Origin: Bugula neritina
Taxonomy: Eukaryota > Animalia > Bryozoa
Reading direction: 5' to 3'
DNA: 64,000 nt
Assembly (NCBI GenBank): GCA_964035545.1
Contig: OZ037769.1
Coordinates: 16,894,633 to 16,958,632 of the forward strand
In this document: one piece after another, positions 18,457 to 58,937 of the stretch
How the letters are laid out: each line of letters begins with the position of its first letter
How positions within the stretch are numbered: position 1 is the stretch's first letter
Made by a program: the position numbers and the translations under genes
Notes under the pieces: generated by a model
What the model saw: the letters and a program-made list of their open reading frames with translations, nothing else
Database searches by the model: none
Told to the model about the DNA's origin: nothing

Positions 18457-18492
18457 GGTTCATGTTCCTTTTACATGTCTTCTATCTACACT

Positions 18493-35278: not shown

Positions 35279-38200
35279 TCACCGCTGCGTGTGTGTATTA
35301 GCTAGCGTCGTCTCTATGCACAGCACAGCCAGCCTCGTGTCACATCTGTACAGCGATTTGTCCAACACCTGTCCCGTCAGGTACGAACTCGCTGCTCCCA
35401 CTTCTGAGCTCTCATTGGACGTCCAAGCCTGGCAGTAGGCTTCAGGGTCTGCCACGCCAGTCGAGCTGGCACCGTGCCAAAAGTGCTTCTTACTCCTTTG
35501 AAACACAACAATTCCAGTATCTCACTTTTTGCACCAACAAAACCTGATGTTCGTTCATCACGTACAAATAAATGAAAGCTGATTCTTGGTGAACTGTAAG
35601 TGTAATAATTCATGAGGCATAAAAATGTAAAAACTGACAAAAGATTTCTAAGGCTCTGACTCACCATATGCTGTCGGTGTGGATGTTGCTGCCGTTAAAT
35701 GTGTATATCGGCACATCAGCCGCCCAGAAGCCCTTCTCTCTGGAAACACCGGACCACGAGTCCAGCAATCTCTCTCCCTGCAAGCAGTTTCAACTCGTCA
35801 CGTCACTCAACAGGATGAGGAAACACATGACAATATACAGATGTATAACAGACAGACACAGTCCACTTGCATTCTCTCAATGTCTCACCAAGTGTGAGAA
35901 AATAAAAAAAATTATTAACCACTTAGCAGTGGTTGTAAAGATTCAAAAGTGACTTTGAGTTTGCAAAGAATTGCAACTTTTGATAGCAAAAATTCATTGT
36001 ATAAAATGCATCGCAAATTAGTGCCCCATTTGTAAAGATACAGTGTTAAGGAAAATATATCTTCTCCATAATTCTCAGTGAAATACATTTTTATTCTACT
36101 AACTATGTTTTGTGACTAGTATTCAAAATGTGAGCTGATGATAGAAATTTGCCAAGTTGTGCTAATTATAAAAATGTGCAATATCTGTTATTTCTTCAAC
36201 CAGGTGACATATTTACGATGTCCATGGAAACCTCACGATTCATAACAAAAAGTTATTCTAAATATTTACTAAGCACTTCCACATTTTTACTATAAATTCA
36301 TTCACATGACCTAAATAATTCCTACAGCTGGCCAACTTAGCAACTTCTCAACAATAATTCTATTCCGATCTTCTATCGTACTAAAGAGTTTATTTACTAT
36401 ATGACATCATGATGATGTCATCTTCTTCCTATATCCTTTAATTTTTAATTAATAAATAATTAACTGAGTTGAATAAATGAACTTGTTTATTGTTCCTATT
36501 TATTTACACCTGCCATTCCCTAATGCACTGAAGAAGCTTAAAGGTTTTTTTTCATAAGCATTAATCTCTTTTCAACTAAAACCAATGGTCTCTCAAGGAA
36601 TAAGTTCTACGCAACGAATCAGTGAGTTTCTTAGCCTGTGTACCTGACTATTAGCTACAGCCAAGTCCCGGTCTTTGTCAAAGACAAGAGAATCCACAGA
36701 CTGCAGTCTAGACGTGAGGACAGCTCGGAAAGTTCCGGAAATACCAGCTTCTCTGGACTGTTTGTAGCACAAGTAGTCTGCTCCGGAGACACCCCCTATC
36801 TCAGCACCACTTAGCGGAGTGTTCAGGGCATATAACCTCAGCTAAATAGAGAAATGAGGCTACAGTGAATAGACATTTAGCTACACAAAGATAACATCGT
36901 TTATTCTTTACTTTTCAGTATTAATTAAAGTGTAGATTCAATGCAGAACATGTTTCTGTCCGTATACTAGAAGAGGAAGTCATACTATGATGTCTAGATG
37001 ACAACCAAATGGCATAATATGACATTTAGTAGGCAAAGCCTCACTTTAAAGAAATTATGAAAACCCGACTTGAAATATTTTATAAAAAATTATAATGATT
37101 GCACACAACAAATTCACACATCTAAAATAGGGCATGCATTCATCCTGCAGCAAATAAACGACAAACATGAAACACCACACATTGGAAAGATAACTCCAGC
37201 CACCACATGTAAATATTATATAACAATATAATTATGTAAGTTAAACTTCTTTAAATTATAAACTAATCACGTTTTCTTAGTAAAGAGACAATACAGTTTC
37301 TGTTAGGCAAACCTTTGAGTCCGAAGTGATACAAGCTTCAAGTTTAAGGCTGAAATAAACTTATTAATAGCAGACTGTGACACCCAAGATTAAACACTAA
37401 ACTAAGGGAAGATAGACAAGGGAAACACAACACAGCATATGTGTCACAAACAGGGTGTCACGACACAGGGTGTCACAACGCATGGTGTCACGACATATTT
37501 AGCTCATATCATGTACCAACCCTTTCATATGGTTTTAGCGTAGACGTCTTTCGCTGTTAAATTAAATTTATACAAATTAAAAAGATAAACTGCTATAAAC
37601 TTTTCTATGATCTTTTGAAAATAGAAAATTGTTTTACTAAATAAGTATTTTAGCCTATGATAATGTGACTATGTAGTGGTGTGACTAAGTAGTGATGTGA
37701 CTATGTAGTGGTGTGACTATGTAATGATGTGATTATGTGGTGATGTGACTAAGAAATACTGACCAGACCAGAGACTTGCTGTTTCCCGGTGGCTGCCGCG
37801 GCATCCTTCATGTTTCTGATCGTAAAGTCTTGTAAGAAAGGAAGTGAGTTGGTCTCTCTCATCGGGATGGTTGGCCCAGTCTGTAACATAGTAGGAGATA
37901 GTGTGAAAAGCTGTGAGATGTTTAGAGATAATGTGAGACTCTGTGAGATATTATGAGATAATGTGAGAAACTGTTAGATATTATGAGATAATGTGAGAAA
38001 CTGTGAGAAGTTTAGAGATAATGTGAGAAACTGTGAGATATTATGAGATAATGTGAGAAAATGTGAGATATTATGAGGTAATGTAGGATAGTATAAAGCA
38101 ATCTGCAATATTAAATGACTATTATAATCCCTGACAAGGTTAGGCTGTGTCAAAGCTTATTGCTGAGTGCTAAAGGATTTAAATTCTTGTATCCTAAATT

Positions 38201-41200
38201 AACAATGACACATGTCAAATAAATATTATTCTAAACAAATTAAAATATTAATATTATATTTCTCAAATACATAAATCATTAGTTTTTTAATAAATATTTC
38301 AAGTAATACAATATCATTAGTATTTCTCGATGGCATGAATTATAGAAATTAAAAGATTAGGATTAGTGTAATGCCTTTAATACGAGTGGAGATGATTCAG
38401 GGTACGAAGGCGTATGATGGGGTGATAAAACCCCCTGAATAGGTGCAGGTGTACTCAGTTTGCCTACTTATTGACTGACAGTGTATTTACTAATGCTTTG
38501 TAATGTAAGTTCAAGCATGAGACTTACTTTCTACAAACATACTCTGTACTTACGAATCACCAACAACGTACGTACCATGATAGCCTGCCAGCCTAGATTC
38601 ACCCGAATGTAAAGTCGCTGTTCGTCTGCGACGAAGCCGAGAGTTCCGGACGGGATGGCGAGAGACGAGCTGCTCATCATACTCTGGTCACTGAACATGA
38701 GAATCTGTAAGAGGTCATTGTTTGTATACCAGTAGAGGTCAATGGGTTCATTATACACACGCTACTCTCTGGTAATACAACATCATTATTCAGGAAGTTA
38801 GCTGAGCACGGAGTAGCATAACTTCTGAGCTTGAAGCCAAGACTGATTCATGCTTAGGCCTAATATAAAATATCAGAACTTCTTTCTACTTTTACATCAC
38901 CACTGCAAGATCTAAGGCTATTTTTAAAAATTGATTCAGTTTAGTAATGTCCATGCTATTATGAATTGTTAATATGGGCAGGGAAAGGCAACTACTAACA
39001 ACTAATAGTTCTACGTACTTCACTCCAATTATGAATACAAATCATAGGTTCAACTAAACGGGTAGAAGTTAGTTTTCTACATTCACAACGCAACATAAGA
39101 AACCATGAATAAAACTGCCAGTAGTAGGCTATTTGTTACTTGGAACTCAGGCAATTTAGTAGTCATGGTAACAGGTTAAACAAATAATGCTGAAACAAAT
39201 GGAGGTAGTAAGCGGGGTGCCGGTAACTCCCCCCTTACCGACCATAGCATGCGGGTTTGATTAGAGCTAAACTGAAAGAACTTACTCCTGACTCAAGCTG
39301 ATAGTACTACAAAGTATAACATGTTACATGCAGCCACTCAGTCCAACAATCAAATCGATTAATATGAACTCAAATTGATTTCCAACTGACTGAAATAAAA
39401 GTCTCTCTAATTATCATTGGCCTAAAATCGCCCAACAAAAAAAGGTAAACAGAACTGAGCTTAGCATGTACTATTCTATTTATAGAACTAATTTATTTTA
39501 CTTTTATTTCAAATTCTAGTTGATCATAACTACTTCTTTCAGGACTCAAGACAGTCACATTGAAAGCAATTAATTATTTTTGTAACAAACATTCCTTTCC
39601 AGCTAGTAATATGTAGCCACTTGAGGGTATAAACTTGGTGCATTTATTGCTCTTTTGCATGATATAAAAATTATTGTAGTATAAAACCTGTAGAGAAATT
39701 AAAAAAGCCATTCGCCAAAATTGGCAGCAATTGAAACATTTTAGTTAATTTTTGTTACGCAAAATGCATTTCTATTTTTACACCCCTCTTCCCTTTACAC
39801 TCCTTCTAGCTATCTGATTTCTCCTTCTAACTACACTCTTTGTTCTCATTATTCACAGACAAACAAACAGACAGACTTACGTTGCCTAAGCTGTTTCCAG
39901 TATTCAACTTTATTGCACCACCGGGTAAACCTGGAGGACCTGGAGGTCCAGGTGGTCCAACGATTGCTTCTCCGGGAGCACCCTAAACACCAGAAATTCA
40001 ATAAACACACTGCATATAATACCTAATATATAATAATATAAGACCACAGAGCTATACACTAGTATATTTTAGTTATATATATTGCTATGTATTTATATAG
40101 TATATTTATATTACAGTATAAATGTTACAATTTATGCTTTACTACTTTCACTATATTTACCTGCGGTCCAGGGGGACCCTCTACAACTGCAACATCCTTC
40201 GTTGACCCTGAAACATGAGTCAGCAATGATGACAGCATATAATGACAGCATGTAATGACAAAGTTTATGTTCACACTGCAGCAAAAGTTTGAAGGAAGGA
40301 AACAGTCACAGGACAGGAAATGACATACACAGATCATGTGACCTACCAGTCTCACAGCTACAGCCACCCGTATCTCCCTTTTCTCCTTTAATAGAGTCAC
40401 CAGGAGTGCCTGGAGCTCCGGGTATTCCATTTTGTCCCTGCAGTAACACCACCATAATATTTACAACATCTCTCTTTTTAGCAGCTTATAAAAGCTTATA
40501 GAAATGTGATTATATGTTTACCGGAAAGCCAGGTGCTCCGATCATTCCCTTTGGACCCGCAATGCCAGGATGACCTTTGACACCTCGATGACCTCTGCGA
40601 CCTCTCTGACCTTTAAATGTGAGACATGTTCCCTCCTCTCCTTTTTCTCCGGCATCCCCCTTATCTCCCTGGTGTCAATATTATTATATACACTGTCTGC
40701 ACAATGCCATACTCAAATATTATATATGTTATGTTATTTATAACATATTATATTATATATTTAGCATGTATTATACATAATATATTATAAATTATATATT
40801 GGCTACTACTGTATGTTATGCTAATAGGCTGGGTTAATTGAAAAATTGTCTAACCTTACAAAAAGTTTCAGCAGAAACTCTTCAAAAGTAAACTACATAA
40901 CTCTATAATCAATAAATCAACAACACAACTAGTTGTGGTAAAATACACATCACATGGTGAAATCTAAAACTCTCTAGAAAGTTCTCAAAGCTTCTGGAAA
41001 TTTGCAGTGAGATGAAGAGATAATGCAACAGGAAACAGACTAGTTGGGATGTCTGGCACCTTCTAGAATTATAAGGAGGAATGAATTCCACTGACAGAAT
41101 TTATATATCAACAAATTCTTAATAAATTATTGACCTACTTATGGTGGCATGAAACTTCTTTGTGTAAAGAAGGCGTGTGCTATTTTATCACAAATTTTCA

Positions 41201-44200
41201 ATAAATCAATGGTTGGCAATTTTTTGGTTCACTGTTGGGGAGGAAATTTCAAAGGGGACATAAATCATAAAACAGGAAATAAATTACTTTACTGAACTGT
41301 GAAAACAGACATACTTTATGTTTGTCACCAGATGAAAGGTATTTGACCCACTTATAGGTAAAATATCATAAATAGTGAAATACCTTTTCTTTTAGCAACG
41401 GTATTATATCCGCCAGGTCACCTAGATCTAGGGCTCCTGGTGCTCCGGCTACTCCGCGTTCTCCCTTCTCACCCTTAGCACCAGCTGACTGCAAGTGCCA
41501 ATAGTAAGTAATATGATAGTTGCCAATTATGTTCAATGTGCATGTCATATCTTATTCTAGAATATTCTTTTCGTAAAGTATGCTTAATTACAGTTTATAT
41601 CATTGTTAGTAAACTTATGTGAGTTGGTAATTGTCTTCTCTTTTTGTCAGCAGTAAATTTATAATATTTCAACTGATACAACTGACACAGTAATTTTATG
41701 TTCTATAGTTAAAATAAATTTGAAATTTGAAAAAAAATTGCTGCTGCACTAAAAAATTATTAAAATTAGCAGTCGTGAATAACCAATATAAGTAGAGAAG
41801 ACAACTCTAAGTAGTAAAACTAGTGAACAACACTTAAAACTTGACTAAATCTACTCACCACATTCTCTGAGAGGAATGGTCTACCAACAGCGGTGCCTGG
41901 AGGGCCAGGTGGTCCGACAGGGCCCGGCAATCCTACACCAGCGTCTCCTTTCTCTCCTTTAGTACCATTTACTCCCGGTACTCCTTGCTTACCAGTTGCA
42001 CCTGGCAGTCCAGGTTGTCCATTTATTCCATCAGCACCTCGGGCTCCTTGAGGTCCCTCAGCACCATCTTCACCTATGAAGACAAACCTAATTATTTACC
42101 TTGCAAAGTGTAACAGCTCGAAGATGATCTAATTAAACTCAATAAAAACATGTAAAGTTAAAACAATACTTCAGTTTATATGCAGTTATGTAACTATTCT
42201 TTGGGGTTTAGTTAAACTATGCAAATTGTGTTAAACAATTTACCTGGAACTCCTTTCTCTCCAGACACTCCTGGTTCACCAACAGCACCCTTTTCTCCTT
42301 TTTCACCTTGAAATCCAGGTTGTCCGGGAGCACCTTCTTTACCAGGTAAACCTTCTTGGACTACTCCATTACTCTACGATTAGGAGATTAAAAACAATTA
42401 CTTAGAAATGCATGAAGCTTACTCTCAAAAGAGGATACAACTCCTTATGTATATATGAGAGCAGAAGATGGCTAGCTATGAGTTGAGTGAACACAACTCT
42501 CTGGCGTGTTGCGTACATCTTAAAAATTATGGAGACTGTACATGGTTACTGTCTGTCATAGTGATGTGCACAGTGTTAGTCACAGTCACACTGTCACAGT
42601 GATGTGCTCAGTGTTAGTCTCAGTCACACTCTGTCACAGTGATGTGCACAGTGTTAGTCACAGTCTCACATAGCTAAAACTCAGCTAAAACTTAAACACA
42701 CCTGTGCAGCTGGTGGTCCAGGTGGGCCTTGTATCCCCTGTGGTCCGCGATCGCCAAGTTCTCCCTTCTCACCTTTGAGTCCAGCTATACCAGCCTCTCC
42801 TTTACTGCCAGTATCTCCCTAAAATAGAATGCATCTGGTGTCGTATGTGTAACCAAGCAGACTGCTATACTATACGCTGCTATACTATATACTGCTATAC
42901 TACACACTGCTATACTATACACTGCTATACTATACACTGCTATACTATACGCTGCTATACTATATACTGCTATACTACACACTGCTATACTATACACTGC
43001 TATACTATACACTGCTATACTATACACTGCTATACTATACACTGCTATACTATACACTGCTATACTATACTCTACTATACTATACACTGCTATACTATAC
43101 ACTGCTATACTATACACTGCTATACTATACACTACTATACTATACACTGCTATACTATATACTGCTATACTATATACTGCTATACTATACACTAATTATA
43201 TGTTATATACTGCTATGCTAGACACTGCTATACTATACTCTACTATACTATACACTGCTATACTATACACTGCTATACTATACACTGCTATACTATACGC
43301 TGCTATACTATACACTGCTATGATATACATTGCTATACTATATACTACTATACTATATCCTGCTATACTATACAGTAATATACTATACAGTAATATACTA
43401 TACAGTAATATACTATACAGTAATATACTATACAGTAATGCAGTGTTTTGTATTAACTGGGAGGGTCAACCAGTTCAATACATGCTGTTCGATTAGTTCT
43501 CCATAGACTGTGAATTTACACAGCAGAGTAAACACCTGGTTTGATACATCAAAAACCCACCCTTACTACACATACATTTAATGCAGTCAGATTATCGACA
43601 ATTGGATATCATAGCCTTGATATTTAACCTCCAGTAACAAAGAGCTTTTGAATTTTTAAGTTTGATAACTTCCAACAAAAGAAAACCTGGTCAAATATAA
43701 CCCTGACCAGTTTACTTTTGCATACTGGGCGTCCCGTAGCCCCTTCCATTATTTGTACACAATTGCTGTGGTACTAAGGCTAGCATTAAATATTCTATTC
43801 AAGTATTTCCTTTTAGACTTTAGATTTAGTGTTCAAAATACAATGTTGTGTCATAAAAGTTAGAAACAAGACTTCCAGAAATTATTAAACACAATAACTT
43901 TGTGGAGAATTTCACTGTTTTACAGCAGCCACCTTACGAAAAGCCTAGTGACTGCATCTTGTAGCTTATGGGATAAATGGACTCGTCAAAGTATACAATC
44001 AAGTATATAATTAGACAGTTAGAACAAATTGAATCATCACAATACCTTTGAGCCATGTGTACCTGAAGCTCCACGTTCTCCTGGCTCTCCCCGTTCTCCA
44101 TGTGTTCCCTGTATAAATAGAAATTAAGAAATTAGGCAATACGTTCATCTGTTATGTCTTAATGCATATTCTACTTAGTCTATGTATTATTATTCTCATA

Positions 44201-47200
44201 CAGGAAGACCAGGAGCTCCAGGTTCTCCGTCAACACCATCTCTACCCGGTGCACCATCTACTGCTGTACAGTTGCCAGTTTCACCTACAAAACCAAGTAT
44301 TTTATAGCAAATGTTTCTCTCCACCCTCAATAGCAATAGTTTCTTCATTGGTTGATGTCTTTGGGGAACCTACCTTTAGGCCCCCTCAATAACTCTAAAG
44401 TAGGAACTCTACTAAATATATCAGCACTAGGCTCCTCTCCTGACCCACTCTCTGCCAGAACTTCTTCCAGTTCCATAAAGAAAGACTTTCCTGGAGGTCC
44501 TTGAGGGCCGACCACAGTATCCCCCTACCAATTACGTTGAGATGTTGTATTCAGAACCATGGCTATTAGTTTCCAGCAAAACTAAACCACTTTTAGCTGA
44601 GATTCTTTTTTCAATCAATCATAATCGCTGCCGCTACTGCTACTGCTGCAACGTTTTGATTAACTATTTTAAATTTTGACTTTGTGCATGGCTCTTCTGG
44701 ATCAAACACTACTTCACCCCACCCTTCTTTTCCCACCCACCTTACCCCACCCGTCTTCTCACTCAAATAGTTGTACAAAACCTGCTAATCAAGCAGAAAA
44801 GTAGACTTGAAATATTTCTCTCAATTTGATATGAAAATGCAGCTAAGAAAACAATATCAGAGTTAACCTGTGGTAGAAAGTATTATAAGAACGTAGCATA
44901 TGCCAGTATAAAGTCACTTGGACATTCCACCTCATACTTCACATGCCCGTAAACTTGTCCCATAAAATATAACAATACACTAATTTGGCTGATTACATTC
45001 TCAACAATAGGAGAGAGAAGCTAAACTGGTCTGTAGCTTGTAAATGTGTCTATTCAATTTTAATGCTTTATCACACAGGAAGTGTGAACAAGAAGAAAGG
45101 GTATAATGGGTGGTTGTTGGCATCATAACTATTATTAAGTCTGTTAGGATTGTACATCGTATAAACGCTAGTCATAACAGAGCAATGAGTCCCTCTTTCT
45201 GATTCGCTAATCAACTGTAATGGTAGAAAGGAAGTGCGCAGAACTGAGTACCTAATTAAGGCTTCAGCTGAAATCGTATGCGGCATTTTACTCGAGACAA
45301 CAATGTCTCAAATTAAATTAGGTTAATGAGTTAATTTTTCTCGACCAGCTCTTACAACTAATAAATTAATGAATTTATATCAAGTTTAACACCGTGACAA
45401 ATATTAAGCTTTCATGCATGGCTTTCGTGATACTAAAGTAATAGACTGCTACTTTTAGATCAGAGAGAGATAACTTCGAATAATACATACTGTAATGTAA
45501 GATATTAACTCTTTTATTTCAATACGGCTTCAACTGCATCAACATATCTCCTATCTACTTTATATTGTAGGTGTGACTTAGTCATGTGACTCGAATCACT
45601 GATGAGGTAAAGGAAAGACAACTCCTGATATAGCGTGATATCCAACATCCAAGGGAATGCGTATAGGGGCCTGTATACTCTACCCAACTTCATAATGAAA
45701 CTGGACTTGCCACTTGACAACTACACTTACATCAACGACATTATAACTTTCCTATTTATAATGATACTAGTTGTAATAGCGCAGTGTGGAGGATATTTAT
45801 CCCCTTCGCTATTAGGACATGTCACTACGCAGTGTATATTGATGCACACAGCTAATAAACACACACTCTCACAGATCCATATAAATGTGTACATTGAGTA
45901 AACTTACCATTTCTCCTTTAGCACCTTTAATTCCCTTTTCTCCGATATCTCCTTTCACTGATTCTCCAGGAACACCGGGTTTTCCGGGTTTTCCCACACC
46001 AGTTTCTCCTTTCTCTCCCTGCACACAATATAAAATGTATATAATGTCTTCATGCATGACTAAGTATTACACATGTAACAATATAATATATAATGCTAAT
46101 GTGAGAAGATACTGTATTCTACCTTAGCGCCTTGCAATCCTGGAGGTCCAATTTCACCCTCCAGACCTGGAATACCATTTATTCCATGTTTACCAGGAGT
46201 TCCGGCCATTCCAGCATCTCCCTTCTCTCCTTTCAACCCTTTATAAATATTGATCAAAAACTAAGTTAGCAGTCAGTAAAACTGCATACATAATGGTTAG
46301 TGTGACTCATGGCTCTTTGTATAAAGTGTCCAATAGCACAGCAGACGTAGAGTTGGGATTGTGTCCCTTGATATATCTCAATTCTTGTAAGGATATAATT
46401 TGCAGATGCTTTACAGGTGAGCAGAGTTAAGTCACACAAACAAGCAGCATTGGCTACAAGAACTTGTGGCCACAGAGGTCTAAGAGACGTGGGAGCTAAC
46501 ACACATGTGCTTTGAGCTAGACCTCACTGTTCAAAGCTGCTGAGAACACTGCAATAACTAGCCTGGGACCACACAGTGTTTACCTATAAGAGAGGGTGCC
46601 GATATCAGGTTCCCACTAGTTGCCTCTCTCTCTGAAATACAATGTTATACTCTAACGAACATCTAATGCTAACAGCTTCAGTAGAACCGCCAATTATCTT
46701 TTAAGTTGTTAGAAAAGGAGTTTTCTACTTATTACTTAAAGTCACAAAGGCGAATAATTCTTTTAGCGGTAACTAAAATGAGCAATCAGTACTATTATAT
46801 CTAATGTGTTGATCTACACTCACCGATACCAGCAGGTCCCATTTCTCCGGGGGCACCCTTCTCGCCCTTTGGTCCGGAGACAGAGACAGGAGAGCGCGTC
46901 TGCAGAGCTCCGTCAACTGCCGGGGCCGGAGCTCTTTCCTTCAGAGATTCTGTCGAGTAGAGAGCAGTTGAGGTCCACCAGACAAACGGCGTCGTTGTTG
47001 AGGAGTCGCCGAGTAACGCTTCAGGATCAACTGGTTCCCTCGGTGGACCCACTGCCAGGAAACCACTTCCCGTTTCTACCTCGTCTTCTCCCGGCTAAAA
47101 ACCGTTACAAAATTGATTATCGTGTATTCAGCTGTGGAGGAAAAGAAATAGTGTAACAGAAAGATGGTGCCATATTAAGAGTAATCCCCCTTGCAAATAG

Positions 47201-50200
47201 TAATAATGCTAAAAGCAGTGATTTTAGGTTTAGCAAAATCATGTTAATCAAACAAGCAAGTGATGATTTGAAAGTTAGTAAAACAGAGCATGCAGCATGA
47301 ATTTACTAAATGTCCTTCACCTTCAAAGAAGTCATAACCTTAGCATGATCAGAAGTGATGACCTTGACAGTAGTGCTGCCCATAGCAGATGTGTAGCCGG
47401 CATCGGTCGCTCCGTTACTAGATGGAGCTGTAGTGTGGGATGGAGGGAAGGAAGAGCTAAAGTTAAGGGACGTATTCGTAACCGCTCTCAAATCAGTGAG
47501 TGAAGTGGTGCTAGTGAGTGAATCCAAGTCTGAGACTGTTTCTGTTACAGAGGAAATCGTCTGCAGCACACTGATTGGCTGTTTAGTTGTAGGAGTTTTC
47601 TCTCTTTCAATAGTCTCGGTTGGAGTAGAGAAAAGGGAAGTTGATGTGGTTAGTTCAGTGGGAGTTGGTGATGCTGTTGCAGTTCTAGATGCCAAAGTGT
47701 CCGTAAAGATCAAGTGGGTTGTCACATTTACCTCTACAACATTTTGATTGTCTTCAGGTATTGTTGCCACTTCTTCTAGCAGTTCAGCACCTGGTATCGA
47801 GTTATTTGACCTTGAGTTATTTGACCTCGAGTCCGAGTCGACAGAGACAGATTCATGAGTGACATTAAGCAATGTCTTTGCATCATTGTGTTCAACTGTT
47901 GATGCTGACGGCGGAAAAACTTCTGTGTCAAAGTTAACCACCGATATGTTGAGGCTAGATACGGGCGGGGCAGGAGCCCCCGCTGCGGCTGGCTGCTGCT
48001 TAGAGTTAGATTTGTGCTGATTGGTTGGATGTGCAGAATCATTAGTGGTTAGTATTGGTGCAGACTGCAAAGCATAAAGTAAGACTCAAAAGCAAGCTGG
48101 TGATCACCTTATGATGCTACTAGTTTACTAGTCTACTAGTCTACTAGCTACTAGTCTACTAGTCTACTAGTCTACTAGTCTACGAGCTACTAGTCTACTA
48201 GTCAAGGTGATCAGTCGGTGACATGCTAAGAAATTAGATTCACAATCTCTCACTAGCTGGATTAGTGTTTGTTTCAGCAAAGTTAATAATTTGTTGAAAT
48301 TGACTTGTAAAAAGGTATGAAAATTTCACTTTTAAGGCAAAACTTCTTTTGTAATGGAGATACTAAAATCATGCATAATGTAAAATAACTTCTTGTCTGA
48401 AAAGGCAAACTAAATACTAAGCAATAAGAAAAAAACTAAACTAGGGTGTCCTTAGCATGCAGAAAAGTTCAAAGGTGTGTCTAAAAAAGCTGAAGACGTG
48501 CTAAAAACTAGTGCATAATTATATTTCACTCAACAACCAACACTGCATCACCAATCTTATGCTTTGTGTGCAAGCTCGAGGTTAGTAGTGTTGCATATTG
48601 TGTATATATTGTGTATATATTGTGTATAATGCAATATATTTACTAGCAAAATTATAATGTATTACATGTATATACGATAGTTCTTGGTTAATTTATTGTC
48701 AAGATGATTATATGACAAGACAGAAAAATATAAACTGTATTATATATCACTATACAGTATAATATTATATATTACAGTATAACATATTACAGTATACTAT
48801 ATTACAGTGTATTATATTACAGCTATATTATATTACAGTATATTATATTACAGTATATTATATTACAGTATATTATATTACAGCAGTATATATTACAGCA
48901 GTATACTATATTACAGTGTATTATATTACAGTATATTATATTACAGTATAATTATTATATTACAGTGTATTATATTACATTATAATATATACCTCAGTAT
49001 CATCAATAATCTGTCCATCCACCACATACTCTCCACCAGGTAATTGTTCCTACAAGAATAGAGGCGGAAAGCTTACTAAGACATCCTGTTGTAACATTTC
49101 TCTTTCACAAAACTCACACCTCAATGGCTTGTTGCAAGACATATTATATTTACTTGAGCACTGACGCATTACCAACTAGCGTTAACTTGTTTCAAGTGCT
49201 TGTAGACTTGATAATGATACTTGATTACTCCTCAACTTAAGTCTCAATCATCCAATCACATTAATTGTTTAATACGCATTCTTTTGAGTAGATGAAAATT
49301 AGCTAATCTGTCACAAACCTCACTGTGTAAACTTTCAGCTGTAACTTAATATCATGTTTGTTGTCCAACTCAAAACAACACAAACATGCTGTTGCTGTTT
49401 GAGAAACAATATTGAATAATGAGCCAACATCTTTGATCTTGTTTTGTCATTTGACACTATGGATTTTGCAGCTTTGTCTCAAGTGTAGAAAATTAAGTAC
49501 TCATTGTTAAACTGTAAACGGCACCTTTTGAGTGATTATGGTATTTATAGAAAAAATCTGTTATGATATAAGCTGATCTTCTGTCACAAGTTGACAGCAT
49601 TTTTCTACCTTAGCAATTGGACCACATAGCCATTGGACCACATAACTATTGGACCACCTGGTCTAATGGACCAGACAGCTATTGGGCCACGTACCTAACA
49701 AATGGGGCCATGCACAGACTGGCCCAAAGAAATAACTAAATTTATGCTGTCATGTAATACTTATGCTTCTAAGCTAAAACAACATATTCATGTACAACTA
49801 TGCAGGAGATACTGCGGTTTTATTATCACTATATATAGAAACTATTGTGGTTAGAAATATTTTACAGAATAGTAATTCGTAGCACTTTGTAGACACCCAC
49901 CTTCTTATCATCTACTCTAATCTCACATTGTCTAGCAGCATCTGAAGGGTCATTGGTTAGCAGAAGCTCCTGTATTTCTCCCTGAAAAGACAAGACAACT
50001 CTAATGATGAAACTAATAATATTGTGTTTGAAAAGTGCGGTGAAGTGGAATCCTGAATTATAGACTGCTAGCCCAAATCACAGAAGAGAATGCTTGCAAC
50101 ATGTACTAATATTTATGGAGTTTTAAATATAATATTAACTACAAATATACAGCATGTGAAGTTGAGCATGTAAATATAGTGGAAACAGACCAACAATGAG

Positions 50201-53200
50201 GTATATTTATATTGTACAGGTTAACAATTCTGTTAAAATTGTTTGTTGTTTGAATAAAGAACTTTTCTTAGTCTGAATTTACTCCAAAAACTGTTTCAAG
50301 GCTGCCCTGGCTCTCTGCACTTTCTGACATGAGCAGTCTAGACGAAAATTTAGAAAGCAGGCTTTTAATGTTAGGGTCAGCTCACAGCCCCCCAGTGTTA
50401 CCCATAAGAGTCTAGGAAGGCAGTCTACGTGTATAAAGAAGATTCTATAGCATTCCAAAAGCTCACATACTTTTACTGGCTTTGAACAAGTCAATTGTAG
50501 CTCAAAATGCAAATTGTTTGCGTTTAGCCGATAGCTTTGATGCATTATTGTGGGCAAAAGCTACATTATATTTTATTAATAACACCTTAGGTGTTGTGCA
50601 AATTTACACAAGCATATAATGAACAAAAATAATTAATTATTAATGGGGCTGATGAAGCATTATAATGGATATATTTGGGCATTATTTAAATGAACTGGCT
50701 TTTCACAGGTGAGCAAGATTGACTCTAAGGTGGCTGTAAATGGCGTGTAGATCAGGTGCTTTGTACTGACTGATGGTGCTCCCCAGACTGCTTAGTATCA
50801 ACATCCTCCTCCTTTGTTCTCTACATCAACTTTACTTACTAACCAAACATTCTCTGAGAATAGAAGGACCTTTGACTCAGAAACATACTTTGGAATAGTT
50901 AAAGTTGAAGTTTAGTTAGTCCTAGTAGCTACTAGAACTAACCAAATGTGTTCTAAGATATCGAGAATTGATGTTTGTTCATATCTTCTACGAATACATG
51001 CTTTTATGTCTGAAAATATGTTCATTAACTCACAAAAACCGTAATTCTGCTTCAGATAAAATTTGCCACTAACACTCCTTTAAAGTTGGAAATTTTCAGA
51101 CAGAAGTTGTGTTCTATAATTTGAAATAATGGAAATAAAAATAGTCTGGTGAAAAGGTCCTCTGTTGGCTAAGCTACCCAAGGTTTTGCATCTTTCATTG
51201 AATGTTTTTAGCAGCCATGATCTAATTGGGCATGGCATTTATGTTCCAACCTTTGGGCTTGTCCCTTTTACACCTAACCCTCACTCTATGCCATTTACCC
51301 TAACCCTCACTCTTTACCCCAAAGCCCTCGCTTGTTACCCTAAATCTCTCACCTCAAACGGTTGAGTGAACACATCTCCTCCGTGACCTATCAACAGATA
51401 TGACCCGTCCACAAAGTTCATGTTACTCAGTTCCCTCTTGTACTCCTGGTTGGCATAGCTTTTACAGTACAGGTGTAGACCTATGTTTGTTCCATTAACG
51501 CCAATAGCAAACTTTGACCATCTTCCTACCATCACTGGAACTGTAAACTCTGCTATCTTTTTGTACCCCTGCAGCACATCACGACGTAAAAAGTTAAATC
51601 TCAAAGTCATAAAATGGTTTCAAACGGCTTCAACTGAATGCTATATATACTGATGGCTGAAAGAAAACACTTACTTTTTAAATTATAGAGTTAATATTTT
51701 AAGTTTAGCTATATTTATGATAAGTATTTTCAATTAGAAACATTGTGTTCACTTGCATATATTCCTTTTGCAACTCTGACTTTCAAGCCATGGTTTGAAA
51801 GTCAGGTGACTGTTTTTCGTAATGAGAAAGAAATTTAATGCTAATCATTTGCTAAGACACTGATGTCTAAGCAATGACTTCTACACTCACATCTTCCAAG
51901 AGGTTCTCTGAGTACCAGAGGTTGATCTTCTGAGTATACTCATTATCTCCGCTAGAAATACTCAGACCAAGTTGGATCACCGTCTCTAGACTGTCTACCA
52001 CAGCAAACAGAAACCCTCCTTCTAAAGTCATGGGTTTTACTGTTGCTAGTATAGAAAAGTCAGACCAGAGGCTAGGTGGAAAGTAGTCGGTTACCTGTAG
52101 GGTCAGTAATTCAACAAGATTACCAAATGAATGTTAAACTAATACTACTACTACTACTACCACTACTACATACTAATACTACTACTACAGTACTACTACT
52201 ACAAACTAATACTACTACTGCTAATAATAATAATAATAATTTACTTACAAGTGTATAGATGGTGCGAGATGACTGAAACTCGTAAGATGGTTTGTCTTCA
52301 AAACTTTCTGCGATGAACACGATGTCTTTTCCTCGGTGTTTAGCAATGGCCTTGACAAGGTCAACCTCTGTAGCACCTAGAGCTGGGTCTAGAATTATAG
52401 TAGATTCTTAGGTTAGTAATGGCGCATGTAGAGATTTCTGCTTAGTTTGGCTACGACTAACGCTAAGAGAGTAGGCCTAAGAAAATCACCCGTCTTTACG
52501 TCTATGATCACAGGCTAAGCAGAGCAGAAGATGCCACTTTAGGAATTGAGCTAGGCCTTTACTACAGAATGAGATAGTAATACGGATGGCTCACACTCTC
52601 ACAGCATATACTAACACAAACAGCATCAGTTGCTTAGTAACACTCAGCTTTTACCACAAGCTGTAGCTCTTCCATTAGCAACAATACTACTAGCTTGGAG
52701 TTGGGAATTCTCTCAACCACGGTTTCGTGTTGTAATATAATTTAATACACAATATCATAATCAAGTGGAGAATCGAATTGTTATATGGACACAAATCTAA
52801 GAGTTATGTCTTCTTACACAATCATGTTCACAACTATCTCTACAGAAGCAAGCCTTACTAACACTACAAGCCGCTAGAGACATCAAGTATACCTTGCAAG
52901 CTGTAGTAGCCACCTAGCGCTGCAAACAGAACATTTAAAGTTGAACTTGAAGCAGCTTTGTGTTCAAACAAGCTAACCAGCCTATGGTGTTACTCTGTGC
53001 TGTTAAATACTATACAAGCATTATTAACACAGAAATATATATAGTAGATAAATAACTCTTTTTTAAATGGTTTTTATATTTAATTAGTTGAAATCACATC
53101 AGTTTTCTATAAAAACTACAGTTGCATCTTTTCTAAACAAGAGTGTGAACTAGCAGACGTATACTTGTATAAACTTGGACCTGAAAATTTTGAATGGTTG

Positions 53201-56200
53201 TTGAAGTTTGTACTTAATTGTTTAGTTTAAACAAAATAGAACAACGCAAATCTTAAAGTTTTAGTAATTTCTTCAAATCACATTGAAAGAACCTTAATCA
53301 TCTTCAAAATAAATTCTGTATATTTGTAAATAAACTACTTGGAGTTTTTACGAAGTATATAAATAATATGTTAATAAATATGAAGCAAGTGCGGTTACTG
53401 TCAAGTGAATGTATAACAGAATTCAATTCAACAAATGATTTTGGTTGTTACTGTTTAACACTAGGTTAGCAGAAGTTCTTTCTATGAGGTAGGAGGTTCA
53501 AACACCCACCCAACATCTCACAGCATTGTTAATATATTATATTAAATTCTCTACTAGACTAAGCTCCAACTGGACGTAGGAGCGTTGTGAACAGGCAACT
53601 AAAGTAGTGGTGTGATAAAACATACAAATATATCTACTAAACTCTTCACAGCATACTCTCCTACTTACACTCTCCCGGCATTATTATCTAGGTCAACCGT
53701 ACTTACACTTGGCTATATAGGTCAACAGAAAACAAAACATGCGTGTACATTAGACGACAGATGATTGAAAACTAAATTCGTGTTACTATATAGCAGCAAG
53801 TTTAGCAAACTATGCTCTCATGGTAACAGGGCAGCAGTACTAGTTGGAACTACCGAACCAAATGCTGTATCAAGCTTTTAGCCTAAACTATTTTTCAGTT
53901 GTTATTCTTTATTCATAATTTTGTTTAGAATCTAAACGATTAATTTAGGAGCATACTAAACTACACATGCTAGAGGTCAATTGGTAGATGTATGCTAGAG
54001 ATCATTTGGTAGAGGTATGCTAAGAGATCATTTGGTAGAAGTATGCTAGAGATCAGTGGTAGAGGTATGCTAGAGATCATTTGGTAGAGGTATGCTAGAG
54101 ATCAGTTGGTAGAGGTATGCTAGAGATCAGTGGTAGAGGTATGCTAGAGATCATTTGGTAGAAGTATGCTAAGAGATCATTTGGTAGAGGTATGCTGGGA
54201 GATGGACTAAAAGGATATACTGCCATCAGCTTTAGTTACTCAAGTATTCTGAAACACAGCCCCTTGTATTAGCCGAGAAGAAATAGTTATTTAGATAAAT
54301 CTGGACTATTGTAACAATAGCATTGTTATAGATGGCTGGTTATTAGTTTTATTCAAGACTTCATGCCTTCAAGCAATTTTTCCAACATTTCATTGTTGAC
54401 GGTATTATGAATTTCTAACAGCTTTCCTCCAGCTGTTTGTTTAAATAAAACATCACTGTATTTTTACAATGCAACTTTATACTGACTGCAATCAGACCTG
54501 TAAAGAAAGGGTATTGTGAAATGTCTGTCTGTTTGTCTGTGCCTAGACTTGGAGTGTTTTAACACATGTAATATTCATAAGATGAAGACAAAAGTAAAAT
54601 CATAAATGTAAATTTCCTAATAAATTATAGTAAATGTTTTCCATAATTTCCGACTGAAAGCAAACCAAATACAGGCTGAATGTGGACTGAATACAGACTA
54701 ATTGTGGACTGAATGTATGTAAACTTACAGTCACAGTTGGGAATGGAGGGTTTGAGAACCCTGGTATTAGCAATCTCCTCCCCTGTCCTGGTGTGCACGC
54801 AGTAACACTCACTGGTCTTGGAGTCGCACTGTATGGGCTCAAAGTCTCCCTTGGGGTCACACTTGGGGATGAACCCTCCATCTCCTGCCGCCCATATTGC
54901 TAAAATCTTCTGTTCGGTGCATGTGGCTGCGTAAACATGAAACACTGGTTTAGCATAATATAGTAATGTTTGGTAACTACGGCAACCAATATATTTATTG
55001 ATGACACAAATGCACACTATACCAATGTGGTAAACTTATCACTGGAAATAGAAAAGTATTTGCAACATATTGGCATTAATTTCTAGAATTTCAATTGCAA
55101 AACCACAGAATAAAATATATTTGAGGTAAGAAATACTTAACTAAGTACCCATAATAGATTATGCATCTATATGCCCATATTATGGGGGTGTAAAAGCTTT
55201 TTGCTAACAACAAGCGAAAGGACAATGCGTTTTTGGGGTCACACCACCTTTATTCATTTCAGTTGTGAATGCTATTAACTCTATCATATAATCAGGTTAC
55301 GATCAGGTGAAGGGGAATGGAACTTTATCACAATACATCTACATACTTGCTTACATGTTGTGAACCCAACTGAAAATTCGGGCATTAAAGTTGATACCCT
55401 ATTTACCCCGGTTACGTTTTTATGTAAACTGAAATTGAATACTTTTTCTGTGGCCCCATTTTTAAAAGTCTGAAATAAACTGGTCGTCATGAAAAGAATG
55501 CATTCCAATTCAAATTATCTGCTTAACTTATTTTTCAAATTTCATCTTGGTAGTAATAATACGAAATTTATTTTCATCAAATGTTGGTGTAGATTTAATC
55601 AAATAATATAATTAATATAAATTTGAGTTGATAATACAAGAATGTGCATCTCTTTTATGCTGCCGAAGTGCTATGGCCAGTTAGAGATGAAAAACGTGCC
55701 GCATTTCTTCTAGCAGTCAGCTTAGAACTGGTTAAAAGGTAAGCATGTCTCTACGTCAGAACTGCAAAACTCTCAAGGCTTTATGTGTTGACAAAGCAGT
55801 CATCACCTGACTATAGGAACCCTTATAAATATGCAAGTTCCCACTCTAGTAGAGTTGTTTGGGGTAGCGCTATGTTGCATAACATTGCAGAAGTCAATAA
55901 CAATATTTTTGTAGGTTTATAATAGAGAGTTTTGTTGAGGTTACATCACCTAGAAACTCTAGGATTAGCTGTCTAGACGCTTTGCAAAAGATTGCCAAAA
56001 CACAAATTACTCAATTTATGTCAACTTCAAAGGAAACATTCAGATGTACAGAAGTAGAGGCGCCAAATATTTATAGTATTTACAGAACTTTCTAGCAGAG
56101 TGGGTAAATGCTGCACTTCTATTATGGTGGTGCGAGTAAGTGTAAAATGTGTGCATTGGGCAACTTGGAACACTTATGAGCTATGAGTGGTTACAGACTA

Positions 56201-58937
56201 CCTACAGCCATTATAATGTACGTGTGTGTGTGTGGGGGGGGGGGTAAAGAAGGGAGCAGCTTGTAAACTAAATGCTTTGAAATATTACATTTTTGCTTAG
56301 TATATTTTAAACAACTTTTTACATTATAATGTATAATAATTGGAGTTGTCTTTCTAACTGTTCTCTTGGGCTGAGCTCGTGTTGCAAGTAAATTAGATTT
56401 TACCCCCTTAATTTAATTACATTTTCCTTCAATCCAACACTTTCTTTTCAGACAATAAACAGGCATTTACATATTTACCTGCATGTACTTACATACTCAC
56501 CTATTTACATACCCTGCTACTTACACACTTACTATGTAATGCCTTACATCTCAACATTATCCCCACTTACTTAGTGTCTCTCACAAGCACTGTAGGCATG
56601 TATAACAGTCAGTATTACTGCCTGTCATATGATAATCCTACATGTAAAAATGTATTTATTTAACTTATTACTGCTCTATACTTCATCATTGCTGCTCGTG
56701 CAACTGTAGTGTATACACAGTAGTATACTGTAGTATATTGTAATATACTGTAGTATAATGTAGTATATTGTAATACACAGTAGTATATGTTGTGTGTAGT
56801 ATGTATCTATTTATATCTTACTTCCCCTGTATTAGAGTTTATAGACAGCACCACCTGCCCCCCTCCCTCCCCCCCCCCCCAGCACTTGAATTGTGAAACA
56901 TGAATCTTGGTGGCAGAAGCTCTTCCAATCTGATAATATTTAACATTTTACATGATTAGCTGCACGTGAATATTTCCTCTAACCATCTACAATGAGTTAG
57001 ACTTGATGTTTGCTAACAAGCAGGGGCATGTGCCCTAATTAATGTAACATTTATTAATTTCCCAATGAATTGCAACTTGCATGCAAATTAAATATGTGGC
57101 AGTGATACAATCTTTGGCCTAAGTTTCTAAAACTTATCAGTTTAGCCTCAGATCAGCAGATTACAACTAGATAGGAATTTATCAGTTTATTTATGGCTCA
57201 ATTTAATGAAAGCTTCGCTGTCTATTTTCATTCCAACTCTTCCCATCTGTTTTAGATATATCTATAATTATCCCTAATCATAGATCTAGAAATATCAATA
57301 TTTAAAATAGCTTTGTAGAGCTGTCAAAATATCTGATGAGTTTTTCAAACAGAAATTTTGACATTTGCAAGCAGGTGTCTGTGTCAAGACACCCAGTTGT
57401 GGCTTCGGCCAATCACTGATCAGCATTTTATACCACACACACTTCTGGCCACTAAGCTATTTAGAGGAGATTTTATATTATATATGGAACTGACAGATCT
57501 TGATTTCTGGTTAAAAAATAGTCAAATCTTAACTCATGAATTTCTAGTGAGCTTTTAGCCACAAAGATGTTTCTAGAGAGACTCAAAGTACAAAAATACT
57601 CCAATTAGACAAACATAATGAGCAAGCAAACAGCGACATGAAACTGTGTTGCAGTAAACACTGCATATGTTTGAGAAATGGTGAAATATAAATGGAGTAA
57701 ATATGAGAAAAGCAGGCTGGGCACTAAATGTTCACGTCTCAACAATGCAGCCTAATCAACCAAATTCTTTCACTCTTTTTATTTACTACTTTGAGTAGAA
57801 ATTGACCAATGAGCCTTAACAACTCCAGTTTTATATTGTCACTGTAATTACACTTACAATAACTCCAATACAAAAGAAATACTTCATAGTTCAGTAATTA
57901 ACATTGTTTCTACAGAGACCAGCATAAGTTAATAGCTTTAAAACACCCCCTTGTAACCAGCCCCACATTGTTCTTAAATAACAGACCGCAATCTGCTAGC
58001 TCTCTCCCCTGTCACGTAGTGCAATGCTGCAAACAATGCCACACTGTGCATATATTCCCGTATAAAGTGCTGAACTGTAAAGTGTGACCTATATTAGTAT
58101 AACAACGTCGCAGACTGTATAAGTGTGGAGGAAATGCAGATAATACGAAGATACAGCCTTTCTATGGACTCATTCATAAGGCTGTACCTCATTTATCAAT
58201 CGTTTTGTTTTAACAAATTTCGTATTCTTATCTTTTAATTGCATGTCCTTGACATCACCATCTGCTGATTAGTATGAATGGCGCTGCCTGGACGCAGATG
58301 TAACCAGATAACATTACATTGATGAGTTCAATTTCCAACGGATCACATTTCAAATGGCTGTTTTAATAACTTCTAACCCTTCTAGAGGTACATCAAACAG
58401 ATCTGCTTTGATTAGGTAAGAATTAAGACTGGCACATGACAAAGTGTATAGAAGTGCTGTGAAATGGAGCCAGCTCAAGTTACCCTACATATGACTACCC
58501 TCTGGGTAATCTTCCCTTAAGATAACATACACAGAATCCAACTCAAAGTGCCTACACGGTGAAGGCAAATTTTTTCATGATATTTTTAAATGCGCATTTG
58601 GCTGGTTGCAGCAGCAGGAGGGCTGGCAGCAGTTCAGACAGAGTTCAAAAACTGAGAGTGATTTGAATAACATACTCGAGTCTTCTCAATTTTAAACTTG
58701 AAAATGGGGCTACTGTTTGGATATTCAGTTAGAGATATTCATTAGGTTACGTCATCATCAAAACTTTATTTTAGTTTAAACTCATAATTTGGCTGAAATT
58801 ACACAGAGTAGAGATCATTTAGTTTATGTTCTCGCAAGTATAAATTCAATAGAATACCTACCTGCGTTGCATACTAAGGTGAACTGTAGCAAGCAGAGCA
58901 AAGCACTGAATAACAGCAGCCGGTTTCCTCCCACCAT
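35279..58937 (-). CDS. Multiplexin (collagen XV/XVIII family): signal peptide, thyroglobulin type-1, TSPN/LamG, Ser/Thr-rich region, interrupted Gly-X-Y, trimerization domain, endostatin; about 1420 aa, 28 exons
   Basis: Phase-consistent minus exons: 58862-58937, 54729-54926, 52249-52388, 51891-52094, 51353-51568, 49901-49981, 48993-49049, 47321-48064, 46824-47094, 46123-46238, 45908-46018, 44374-44524, 44202-44284, 44046-44108, 42702-42818, 42244-42373, 41859-42073, 41384-41488, 40522-40668, 40347-40437, 40161-40207, 39881-39982, 38576-38704, 37764-37880, 37521-37553, 36644-36841, 35665-35777, 35279-35495. TSPN motif [17 protein letters not shown]; trimerization motif [21 protein letters not shown]; endostatin motifs [28 protein letters not shown] and FWHG..YCQAW..LAVLCIE. 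It cannot be called COL15A1 or COL18A1 specifically. Confidence 0.92.
37660..38085. repeat. Two intronic minisatellites (16-bp GTGACTATGTAGTGGT at about 37660-37750; 20-bp GTGAGAAACTGTGAGATATT-like at about 37900-38085) flanking a multiplexin exon
   Basis: Directly visible degenerate tandem units. Confidence 0.8.
42861..43439. repeat. 15-bp minisatellite (ACTGCTATACTATAC), about 38 copies
   Basis: Directly visible; explains spurious ORFs 42785-43496. Confidence 0.95.
48118..48202. repeat. (TAGTCTAC)n microsatellite
   Basis: Directly visible. Confidence 0.85.
48750..48980. repeat. 15-bp AT-rich minisatellite (TATATTACAGTATAT)
   Basis: Directly visible next to the donor at 48992. Confidence 0.85.
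52138..52240. repeat. (ACT)n/(AAT)n microsatellite in a short multiplexin intron
   Basis: Directly visible. Confidence 0.85.
53966..54197. repeat. About 25-bp minisatellite (ATGCTAGAGATCATTTGGTAGAGGT), about 9 copies
   Basis: Directly visible. Confidence 0.9.
54729..54926 (-). CDS. Thyroglobulin type-1 (6-Cys) domain exon, phase 1-1
   Basis: [66 protein letters not shown]: F-I-P-x-C, G-x-F-x-P-x-Q-C and CYCV (canonical CWCV), G-E-E-I motifs. Flanked by ...ACGCAG acceptor and GTAAGT donor; 198 nt. Confidence 0.9.

What the first reader, a model, noticed from the sequence alone, without database searches (positions are those of the whole stretch)
52249..58937. Multiplexin with an N-terminal thyroglobulin type-1 domain: a possible built-in cathepsin inhibitor on the endostatin precursor
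Seen: a signal-peptide exon (58862-58937, ends phase 1), a complete 6-Cys thyroglobulin type-1 exon (54729-54926, phase 1-1) and the first TSPN exon (starts phase 1 at 52388) join in frame. I found no other signal exon in between. Known: vertebrate collagen XVIII long isoforms place DUF959/Frizzled modules here, and I know no multiplexin with a thyroglobulin type-1 module. Some such domains (thyropins: p41 invariant chain, equistatin, saxiphilin) inhibit cathepsin L-type proteases, and cathepsin L releases endostatin from collagen XVIII. Inference: exon shuffling may have coupled the substrate to an inhibitor of its own processing protease, or added a nidogen/SMOC/testican-like matrix-binding module.
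Basis: partly seen in the sequence, partly recalled or inferred. Interest (0 to 1): 0.8.

Follow-up and report, generated by a model that had tools for sequence, protein, structure and literature searches.

The report
Basement-membrane collagen with thyroglobulin-type head
A moss-animal (probable Bugula) version of the basement-membrane collagen XV/XVIII starts with a small thyroglobulin type-1 domain that is spliced into the mRNA and kept in a second gene copy and in two other species; this is a new domain combination, and its suggested protease-inhibitor role is untested.

Summary
On the minus strand, a signal-peptide exon (58937-58862), a 198-nt phase 1-1 exon and the first TSPN exon (52388-52249) have canonical AG/GT sites and join in frame. 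The 198-nt exon encodes a six-cysteine thyroglobulin type-1 (TY) domain (Pfam 4.9e-16). Downstream exons give multiplexin hallmarks: collagen repeats, the XV/XVIII trimerization domain and endostatin. RNA-Seq contigs from a ~93%-identical relative carry both junctions. One 329-nt contig runs 5'UTR-signal-TY-TSPN.

New here: the genome holds a second, deeply diverged multiplexin paralog (42-74% amino-acid identity per exon). It has the same single-exon, phase 1-1 TY module directly before TSPN. Metagenome contigs from two further unidentified organisms show the same order. The four TY domains are each other's closest relatives, so this is an old, maintained architecture, not a recent shuffle or a prediction artefact.

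None of 115 long multiplexins fetched (chordates, arthropods, one nematode) has a TY domain, and no paper found describes one. Lophotrochozoan databases could not be surveyed.

The cathepsin-inhibitor idea is plausible by analogy (p41, saxiphilin, testican, EpCAM) but untested. I rate it about 0.3. Verdict: a real new variant of a known collagen family, of moderate interest.

The parts
58862..58937 (-). Exon 1: start codon and signal peptide (25 codons + 1 base, phase 1 donor)
   Evidence: Read directly. A hydrophobic core follows a basic n-region. X2 contig 12 continues from the TY exon into 58868-58897 with 1 mismatch.
54729..54926 (-). Exon 2: complete thyroglobulin type-1 domain, 198 nt, phase 1-1, six Cys
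   Evidence: AG/GT sites. Pfam PF00086 E=4.9e-16. PDB sequence hits to thyroglobulin, saxiphilin and p41. RNA contigs cover it at a depth like that of the TSPN exon.
52249..52388 (-). Exon 3: first TSPN exon (starts phase 1, ends phase 0)
   Evidence: Joint 52388>54729 in X1 and X2 contigs. Homologous exon in the C4 paralog and in L019.
51891..52094 (-). TSPN exon 2 (204 nt, phase 0-0)
   Evidence: for the boundaries. tblastn gives 54% identity to residues 82-145 of a 'Thrombospondin-like N-terminal domain-containing protein' (P0077) and 41% to amphioxus multiplexin P0116.
51353..51568 (-). TSPN exon 3 (216 nt, phase 0-0)
   Evidence: tblastn to P0116 residues 153-200. 42-51% identical to the matching exon of the paralog, L017 and L019.
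47306..48070 (-). Ser/Thr/Pro-rich mucin-like open frame between the TSPN and collagen exons (exon limits not refined)
   Evidence: ORF list. No Pfam hit. No counterpart in the paralog.
39840..47052 (-). Interrupted collagenous region: several Gly-X-Y exons (46801-47052, 46096-46257, 45869-46057, 44345-44515, 44196-44348, 41366-41548, 40306-40455 and more)
   Evidence: ORF list. Pfam Collagen hits reach 2e-8 at best, and only 46099-46257 passes the cut-off. Exon limits were not refined.
38534..38758 (-). Collagen XV/XVIII trimerization domain exon
   Evidence: Pfam PF20010 E=7.5e-10.
36596..36859 (-). Endostatin exon (N-terminal part of the domain)
   Evidence: Pfam PF06482 E=2.7e-7. Own-genome scan gives 56 bits. 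tblastn to multiplexins.
35279..35506 (-). Last endostatin exon with the stop codon
   Evidence: Pfam PF06482 E=1.1e-14. 207 endostatin-bearing relatives in the representative library.

Best explanation
Shown: the window carries a multiplexin (collagen XV/XVIII-type) gene on the minus strand, 58937 to 35279. The domain order is signal peptide, one TY-1 domain, TSPN, a mucin-like stretch, interrupted collagen, the trimerization domain and endostatin. The TY domain is one symmetrical phase 1-1 exon. In a close relative's mRNA it is spliced between the signal exon and the first TSPN exon. A deeply diverged paralog in the same genome has the same module in the same exon phase, and so do two other organisms. 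It is therefore an inherited, selectively maintained part of this multiplexin lineage.

Inferred: multiplexins are homotrimers, so each molecule would display three TY domains at its N-terminal tip, away from the endostatin end. My best guess at the mechanism is a matrix-anchored binding module for a secreted partner. The single most likely partner class is papain-like cysteine cathepsins, in thyropin-like binding or inhibition (about 0.3). That would limit pericellular cathepsin activity at the basement membrane rather than act in cis on the distant endostatin hinge. The stated confidence applies to the anatomical and evolutionary part.
For: - Exon limits and phases.
- TY domain: Pfam 4.9e-16.
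- Multiplexin hallmarks on downstream exons.
- RNA contig joint 52388>54729 in two runs. One 329-nt contig spans 5'UTR-signal-TY-TSPN1. TY-exon contig depth (227; 138+126) is similar to TSPN1 depth (279), against 11-45 in the introns.
- Paralog on C4: colinear TY, TSPN1-3, collagen, trimerization and endostatin exons at 42-74% identity. Its TY exon is 186 nt, phase 1-1, Pfam 3.3e-13.
- L017/L020 and L019, two other organisms: TY exon of 186 nt, phase 1-1, followed by TSPN and collagen exons. In L020 a signal-like phase-1 exon lies about 240 nt upstream of the TY exon.
- All six Cys and the G-E/D-E...T-R...N-C tail are conserved in the four TY domains.
- The four TY domains are each other's best matches (57-91 bits), against at most 37 bits to other TY exons of this genome.
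- For the functional guess: sequence similarity to p41 (4.7e-8) and saxiphilin TY domains (4.7e-16). Several TY domains inhibit cathepsin L (PMC8114703). Cathepsins L and S release endostatin (PMC6468544).
Against: - The transcript evidence comes from assembled contigs of a relative (~93% identical), not from reads of this individual. The library is only guessed to be RNA, although a GT..AG-bounded intron is precisely removed.
- The exon is symmetrical, so skipping would stay in frame, and a TY-less isoform is not excluded.
- Only the first three exons are shown to be joined. The rest of the transcript is inferred from colinearity.
- L017 and L019 end before any endostatin exon and come from unidentified organisms.
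- For function: no assay. The best single-domain matches are thyroglobulin repeats, which are not inhibitors. The AlphaFold model was too poor (pLDDT 58.5) to inspect the loops.
Confidence: 0.85

Rival explanations
1. The TY domain is a non-inhibitory interaction module. Like the TY modules of nidogen, SMOC or the IGF-binding proteins, it would bind another matrix or signalling protein, or simply stabilise the N-terminus. It would have no role in protease control.
For: Many TY domains are not known inhibitors. The best single-domain PDB matches are thyroglobulin repeats. The conserved residues across the four multiplexin TY domains are mostly the structural core: Cys, Gly, Pro, QC, CWCV. The position next to TSPN, itself an interaction domain, fits a binding role.
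Against: Nothing excludes it. It is hard to separate from the best explanation without experiments. p41 and saxiphilin similarity is also significant.
Confidence: 0.45
2. The TY exon is a regulated cassette exon, like exon 6b of CD74 that makes the p41 isoform. In that case only some tissues or stages make the TY-bearing multiplexin, and a TY-less signal-to-TSPN form also exists.
For: The exon is phase 1-1, so skipping keeps the frame. The X1 contig of the TSPN1 exon breaks exactly at the exon edge 52388, which suggests more than one upstream path in the assembly graph. Vertebrate COL18A1 also varies its N-terminus (my own knowledge).
Against: No skipping joint or matching loose end at 52388 was listed, though the list was truncated and the signal exon lay outside the stretch I laid. 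TY-exon depth is about equal to TSPN1 depth. The contig break is also explained by the unspliced contig 52359-53038.
Confidence: 0.25
3. Artefact: the signal and TY exons belong to a separate small upstream gene, and the fusion to the collagen is only a reading-frame coincidence.
For: Introns of 3.9 and 2.3 kb separate the exons. No full-length transcript is available.
Against: Spliced contigs join TY to TSPN1 at the exact predicted sites in two runs. The same TY-TSPN adjacency and phase recur in a paralog and in two other organisms.
Confidence: 0.03

Closest known systems
Vertebrate collagen XVIII (COL18A1) N-terminal variants and collagen XV
   Same: The core order is the same: signal, (variable N-terminal module), TSPN, interrupted collagen, trimerization domain, endostatin. 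An extra cysteine-rich module can sit ahead of TSPN.
   Different: Vertebrates use DUF959 and Frizzled modules from alternative promoters or splicing (seen). Here the module is a single TY-1 domain placed directly after the signal peptide. No vertebrate, amphioxus or ascidian sequence retrieved has TY.
Invertebrate multiplexins (Drosophila Multiplexin, C. elegans CLE-1, echinoderm and Nematostella collagen XV/XVIII-like)
   Same: TSPN plus interrupted collagen plus endostatin. Nematostella also has a mucin-like insertion (PMC12549020), as does the window gene.
   Different: None is reported with a TY domain (PMC10381214; PMC12549020). None of the arthropod or nematode sequences fetched has one.
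MHC class II invariant chain p41 isoform (CD74 with its TY exon)
   Same: A single TY-1A domain encoded by one exon and inserted in frame into an otherwise unrelated trimeric protein. Sequence similarity is E=4.7e-8.
   Different: p41 is a membrane chaperone of the endosomal pathway and a proven picomolar cathepsin L inhibitor (my own knowledge). Here the host protein is a secreted collagen and activity is unknown.
Testican/SPOCK, SMOC, nidogen (matrix proteins carrying TY modules)
   Same: Basement-membrane or pericellular matrix proteins with one or two TY-1 domains. The testican TY domain inhibits cathepsin L (reference list of PMC8114703).
   Different: They have different host scaffolds. 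Their TY domains are internal, not at the mature N-terminus. In this genome the other TY domains are split over two exons.

Membership tests
Multiplexin (collagen XV/XVIII type) | C-terminal endostatin domain | tested here: met
   PF06482 on two exons, E=2.7e-7 and 1.1e-14, both over the cut-off. Confirmed by the own-genome scan.
Multiplexin (collagen XV/XVIII type) | XV/XVIII-type trimerization domain ahead of endostatin | tested here: met
   PF20010 E=7.5e-10, 39.1 bits against a cut-off of 23.8.
Multiplexin (collagen XV/XVIII type) | Collagenous domain with multiple interruptions | tested here: met
   Several separate Gly-X-Y exons between 47052 and 39840. Pfam Collagen scores 2e-8 on one exon and below the cut-off on others. 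Exon limits were not refined, so the interruptions were not counted.
Multiplexin (collagen XV/XVIII type) | N-terminal TSPN (thrombospondin N-terminal-like / laminin-G-like) domain | tested here: met
   There is no Pfam hit on the single exons. However, tblastn places window 52127-51419 on the TSPN region of named multiplexins (P0077 54%, P0116 41%).
Multiplexin (collagen XV/XVIII type) | All modules on one transcript or protein | tested here: inconclusive
   Only 5'UTR-signal-TY-TSPN1 is shown joined. The rest rests on same-strand colinearity, repeated in the paralog.
Thyroglobulin type-1 domain (PF00086), type 1A | Six cysteines with QC and C-[WY]-C-V motifs; profile match over the cut-off | tested here: met
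   58.4 bits against a cut-off of 20.6. Six Cys, QC and CYCV read. CWCV in the paralog, L017 and L019.
Thyroglobulin type-1 domain (PF00086), type 1A | TY fold (helix plus beta subdomains with three disulfides) | tested here: inconclusive
   The AlphaFold2 model from a 4-sequence alignment had mean pLDDT 58.5. That is too poor for a fold search, so none was run.
Thyropins (TY domains that inhibit cysteine, aspartic or metallo-proteases) | Measured tight-binding inhibition of a protease | not testable with these tools
   This needs recombinant protein and enzyme kinetics. Sequence similarity to p41 and saxiphilin is a lead only.

The most novel reading that the evidence does not exclude
The N-terminal TY trimer is a true thyropin. 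These multiplexins would then be matrix-anchored, trivalent cathepsin L-type inhibitors that tune basement-membrane turnover, including release of their own endostatin domain from neighbouring molecules. That would be a substrate carrying an inhibitor of its processing protease, kept for a long evolutionary time in at least one animal lineage.
Probability: 0.2. Interest if true: 0.7.

Novelty: new variant of a known kind. Interest (0 to 1): 0.5.

Why it matters
Multiplexins are among the most conserved basement-membrane components, and their N-terminal variability (the Frizzled and DUF959 modules in vertebrates) is tied to distinct functions. A conserved TY-headed multiplexin adds a third kind of N-terminal module. 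It shows that this end of the molecule has been a repeated site of domain acquisition. It also gives a simple hypothesis to test: a collagen that carries a protease-binding domain into the basement membrane. If the domain inhibits cathepsins, it would link endostatin biology to thyropin biology in one polypeptide.

Tried and rejected
- **Word search, TY-containing open frame:** candidates of 72-227 aa gave no candidate.
- **Endostatin-seeded searches:** the representative search and the word search from amphioxus P0116 returned mainly fragments plus arthropod and chordate multiplexins. They returned no full-length lophotrochozoan, so the claim 'no other phylum has it' could not be tested.
- **Protein atlas:** it gave only generic TY clusters.
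- **AlphaFold2 on the TY exon with a 4-sequence alignment:** pLDDT 58.5. I ran no fold search, because matches to a poor model are meaningless.
- **Literature:** multiplexin + thyroglobulin (type-1), endostatin + TSPN + thyroglobulin, and thyropin + collagen XVIII gave no description of this architecture. The 2006 TY-superfamily survey (Novinec et al.) is not held.
- **Alternative first exons:** a crude scan for phase-1, signal-like exons found none in the TY-TSPN intron and only poor-donor candidates in the signal-TY intron.
- **Rejected, haplotig:** the C4 copy is not an allelic copy, because it is only 42-74% identical at protein level.
- **Rejected, separate upstream gene:** see the rival explanations.
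- All searches and the fold were done exon by exon by reference, so no full-length architecture search or full-length model was made.
- **Single-use tools:** the reads tools were used once each. The first junction (58862>54926) lay partly outside the 6,000-letter stretch and was recovered from a loose end.

Full report
**1. Is it there?**

I read the three exons on the minus strand.
- Signal exon: 58937-58862. It encodes M-V-G-G-N-R followed by a leucine-rich core and ...V-C-N-A, then one extra base before the donor GTAGGT.
- TY exon: 54926-54729. It follows ...TTTACGCAG and ends before GTAAGT. It is 198 nt, phase 1-1, with six cysteines and the QC and CYCV signatures.
- First TSPN exon: 52388-52249. 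It follows ...TTCTAG, completes the split codon and ends in phase 0 before GTAAGT.

Pfam Thyroglobulin_1 matches the middle exon at E=4.9e-16 (58.4 bits, cut-off 20.6). Against solved structures the exon matches thyroglobulin repeats, the saxiphilin TY domains (4.7e-16) and the p41 invariant-chain fragment (4.7e-8).

**2. Is the gene a multiplexin?**

Each downstream minus-strand open frame was scanned on its own.
- Collagen XV/XVIII trimerization domain: 38534-38758, E=7.5e-10.
- Endostatin: 36596-36772 (2.7e-7) and 35282-35506 (1.1e-14).
- Collagen repeats on several Gly-X-Y exons between 47052 and 39840.

I refined two further TSPN exons, 52094-51891 and 51568-51353, both phase 0-0. They align to the TSPN region of named multiplexins: 54% to an ostracod 'Thrombospondin-like N-terminal domain-containing protein' and 41% to amphioxus. 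A 254-residue Ser/Thr/Pro-rich frame (48070-47306) lies between the TSPN and collagen exons.

**3. Is the TY exon spliced in?**

Only three runs held the stretch. One is a DNA run that is probably the source assembly. The other two are 'symbiont metagenome' RNA-Seq runs from one sample of a ~93%-identical relative. I laid them on 52200-58199.
- Both RNA runs have a contig with the joint 52388>54729. It skips 2,340 nt bounded by CT..AC on the plus strand, which is GT..AG on the gene strand.
- X2 contig 12 (329 nt) has 30 nt of TSPN1, the whole TY exon and 95 further letters. The first 30 of those match window 58868-58897 with one mismatch.
- The 6-nt offset is expected, because the signal exon and the intron both end in ACGCAG.
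- One contig therefore reads 5'UTR-signal-TY-TSPN1.
- TY-exon contig depths (227; 138+126) resemble TSPN1 depth (279), and intron contigs are at 7-45. The tool warns that contig depth is a poor measure. I conclude only that the TY form is a major form.
- Because the exon is symmetrical, a TY-less isoform cannot be excluded.

**4.

*Paralog in the same genome.* A Pfam scan of the window's own assembly found a second set of endostatin exons on contig C4 (about 89.9-92.0 kb). It also found a TY exon about 14 kb upstream on the same strand. tblastn with the window's single exons shows a colinear paralog:

| Exon | Amino-acid identity to the window gene |
|---|---|
| TY | 45% |
| TSPN1 | 45% |
| TSPN2 | 74% |
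| TSPN3 | 42% |
| Trimerization | 63% |
| Endostatin | 51-53% |

The paralog's TY exon (L013:6242-6057) is 186 nt and phase 1-1, with AG/GT sites. A TSPN1 exon follows it in the same phase. Pfam gives 3.3e-13.

*Other organisms.* A profile of the two TY exons found two short proteins, and I fetched their contigs.
- L018 is the same paralog in a Bugula-complex metagenome.
- L017 is a 12.4-kb ENA contig with no nucleotide similarity to the window or to the C4 paralog. It carries TY, then TSPN1, TSPN2 and TSPN3, then collagen exons on one strand.
- A metagenome scan added L020 and L021 (the same organism as L017) and L019, a third organism with the same order in a compact gene.
- In L017 and L019 the TY exon is again 186 nt and phase 1-1.
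- In L020 a signal-like phase-1 exon with a GTAAGT donor lies about 240 nt upstream of the TY exon.

*Relationships.* Per-exon identities group C4, L017 and L019 together (51-70%) against the window gene (42-74%). The window gene is therefore the more divergent of two old paralogs. The four TY domains share all six Cys and a G-E/D-E...T-R...N-C tail. They are each other's best matches (57-91 bits). Against the other TY exons of this genome they score at most 37 bits, and those other domains are split by introns. This points to a single acquisition followed by vertical descent.

**5. Is it known?**

- The endostatin-seeded search of 1.84 billion representatives gave 207 hits. The 21 long ones are insects, a mite, an ostracod, a springtail, amphioxus, an ascidian and amphibians.
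- Their Pfam content is Endostatin, Collagen and Collagen_trimer in 21 of 21, Laminin_G_3 in 4, DUF959 in 2, Fz in 1 and Thyroglobulin_1 in 0.
- Fifty more multiplexins found from the amphioxus endostatin region, mostly vertebrates, have no PF00086.
- A profile of the four TY exons hits none of the 115 long proteins fetched.
- Reviews of echinoderm and sea-anemone matrix proteins describe multiplexins as signal-TSPN-collagen-endostatin, without TY.
- No paper in the library links TY with a multiplexin.
- Limit: I retrieved no full-length lophotrochozoan multiplexin. The architecture may therefore already sit unremarked in automatic annotations of related phyla.

**6. How it probably works**

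Shown: the mature chain begins with the TY domain, immediately followed by TSPN.

From established knowledge: multiplexins trimerise through the NC1 trimerization domain, so three TY domains would sit together at the N-terminal tip.

Inferred: the module is a binding head.
- Several single TY domains are tight cathepsin L-type inhibitors: p41, saxiphilin, testican and EpCAM (PMC8114703 and its references).
- Cathepsins L and S release endostatin from collagen XVIII (PMC6468544).
- A thyropin-like role is therefore the most specific candidate, at about 0.3.
- It would more plausibly act on proteases near the matrix, or in trans on neighbouring molecules, than in cis on a hinge that lies a full collagen length away.
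- A non-inhibitory binding role is at least as likely, at about 0.45.
- Sequence alone cannot decide, and the structure model was too poor to inspect the inhibitory loops.

**7. Organism**

Earlier notes of this scan name the genome as the bryozoan Bugula neritina. I did not test this independently. It fits the 'symbiont metagenome' RNA runs of a ~93%-identical relative.

That joined step was left out.
- Read laying was given 6,000 letters.

**Verdict**

This is a new, conserved variant of a known collagen family. The functional idea is open and testable. Interest is moderate.

Noticed in passing
G000:C4:~89,900-107,100 (loci L011-L014; TY exon L013:6057-6242): A second, deeply diverged multiplexin gene in the same genome, also with a TY exon ahead of TSPN. 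It seems to lack the large mucin-like exon of the window gene.
   Followed up: yes
L013:5400-6030: The intron between the paralog's TY and TSPN1 exons consists almost entirely of a ~23-nt tandem repeat.
   Followed up: no
window 47306-48070 (-): A 254-residue Ser/Thr/Pro-rich mucin-like open frame lies between the TSPN and collagen exons. It has no Pfam hit and no counterpart in the paralog. Nematostella collagen XVIII-like is also reported with a mucin-like insertion.
   Followed up: partly
window 26872-33613 (+): A run of EGF-like cysteine-rich exons (26872-27012, 28266-28466, 29541-29708) is followed by CUB-like exons (32319-32546, 33407-33613). It is probably another secreted matrix or protease-related gene.
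   Followed up: no
window 56703-56767: A short element inside the signal-TY intron is covered at 16-25 times the flanking depth in the DNA run, so it is a dispersed high-copy repeat.
   Followed up: no
window 18475-20316 (+): A long open frame with dozens of P-S-N-W-T heptads and a cysteine-rich tail. An earlier report of this scan already describes it as an NWT-heptad glycoprotein with a D10C domain.
   Followed up: no
window 4314-5500 (both strands): Long tandem repeats of 24-nt units give repetitive open frames on both strands. They are probably non-coding satellite-like DNA.
   Followed up: no
G000:C3:10360001-10362820 and G000:C5:5701308-5703160 (L007-L010): These are the only other TY-domain hits in the genome scan. 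Each domain is split over two exons, unlike the single-exon multiplexin TY. The genes were not identified.
   Followed up: partly
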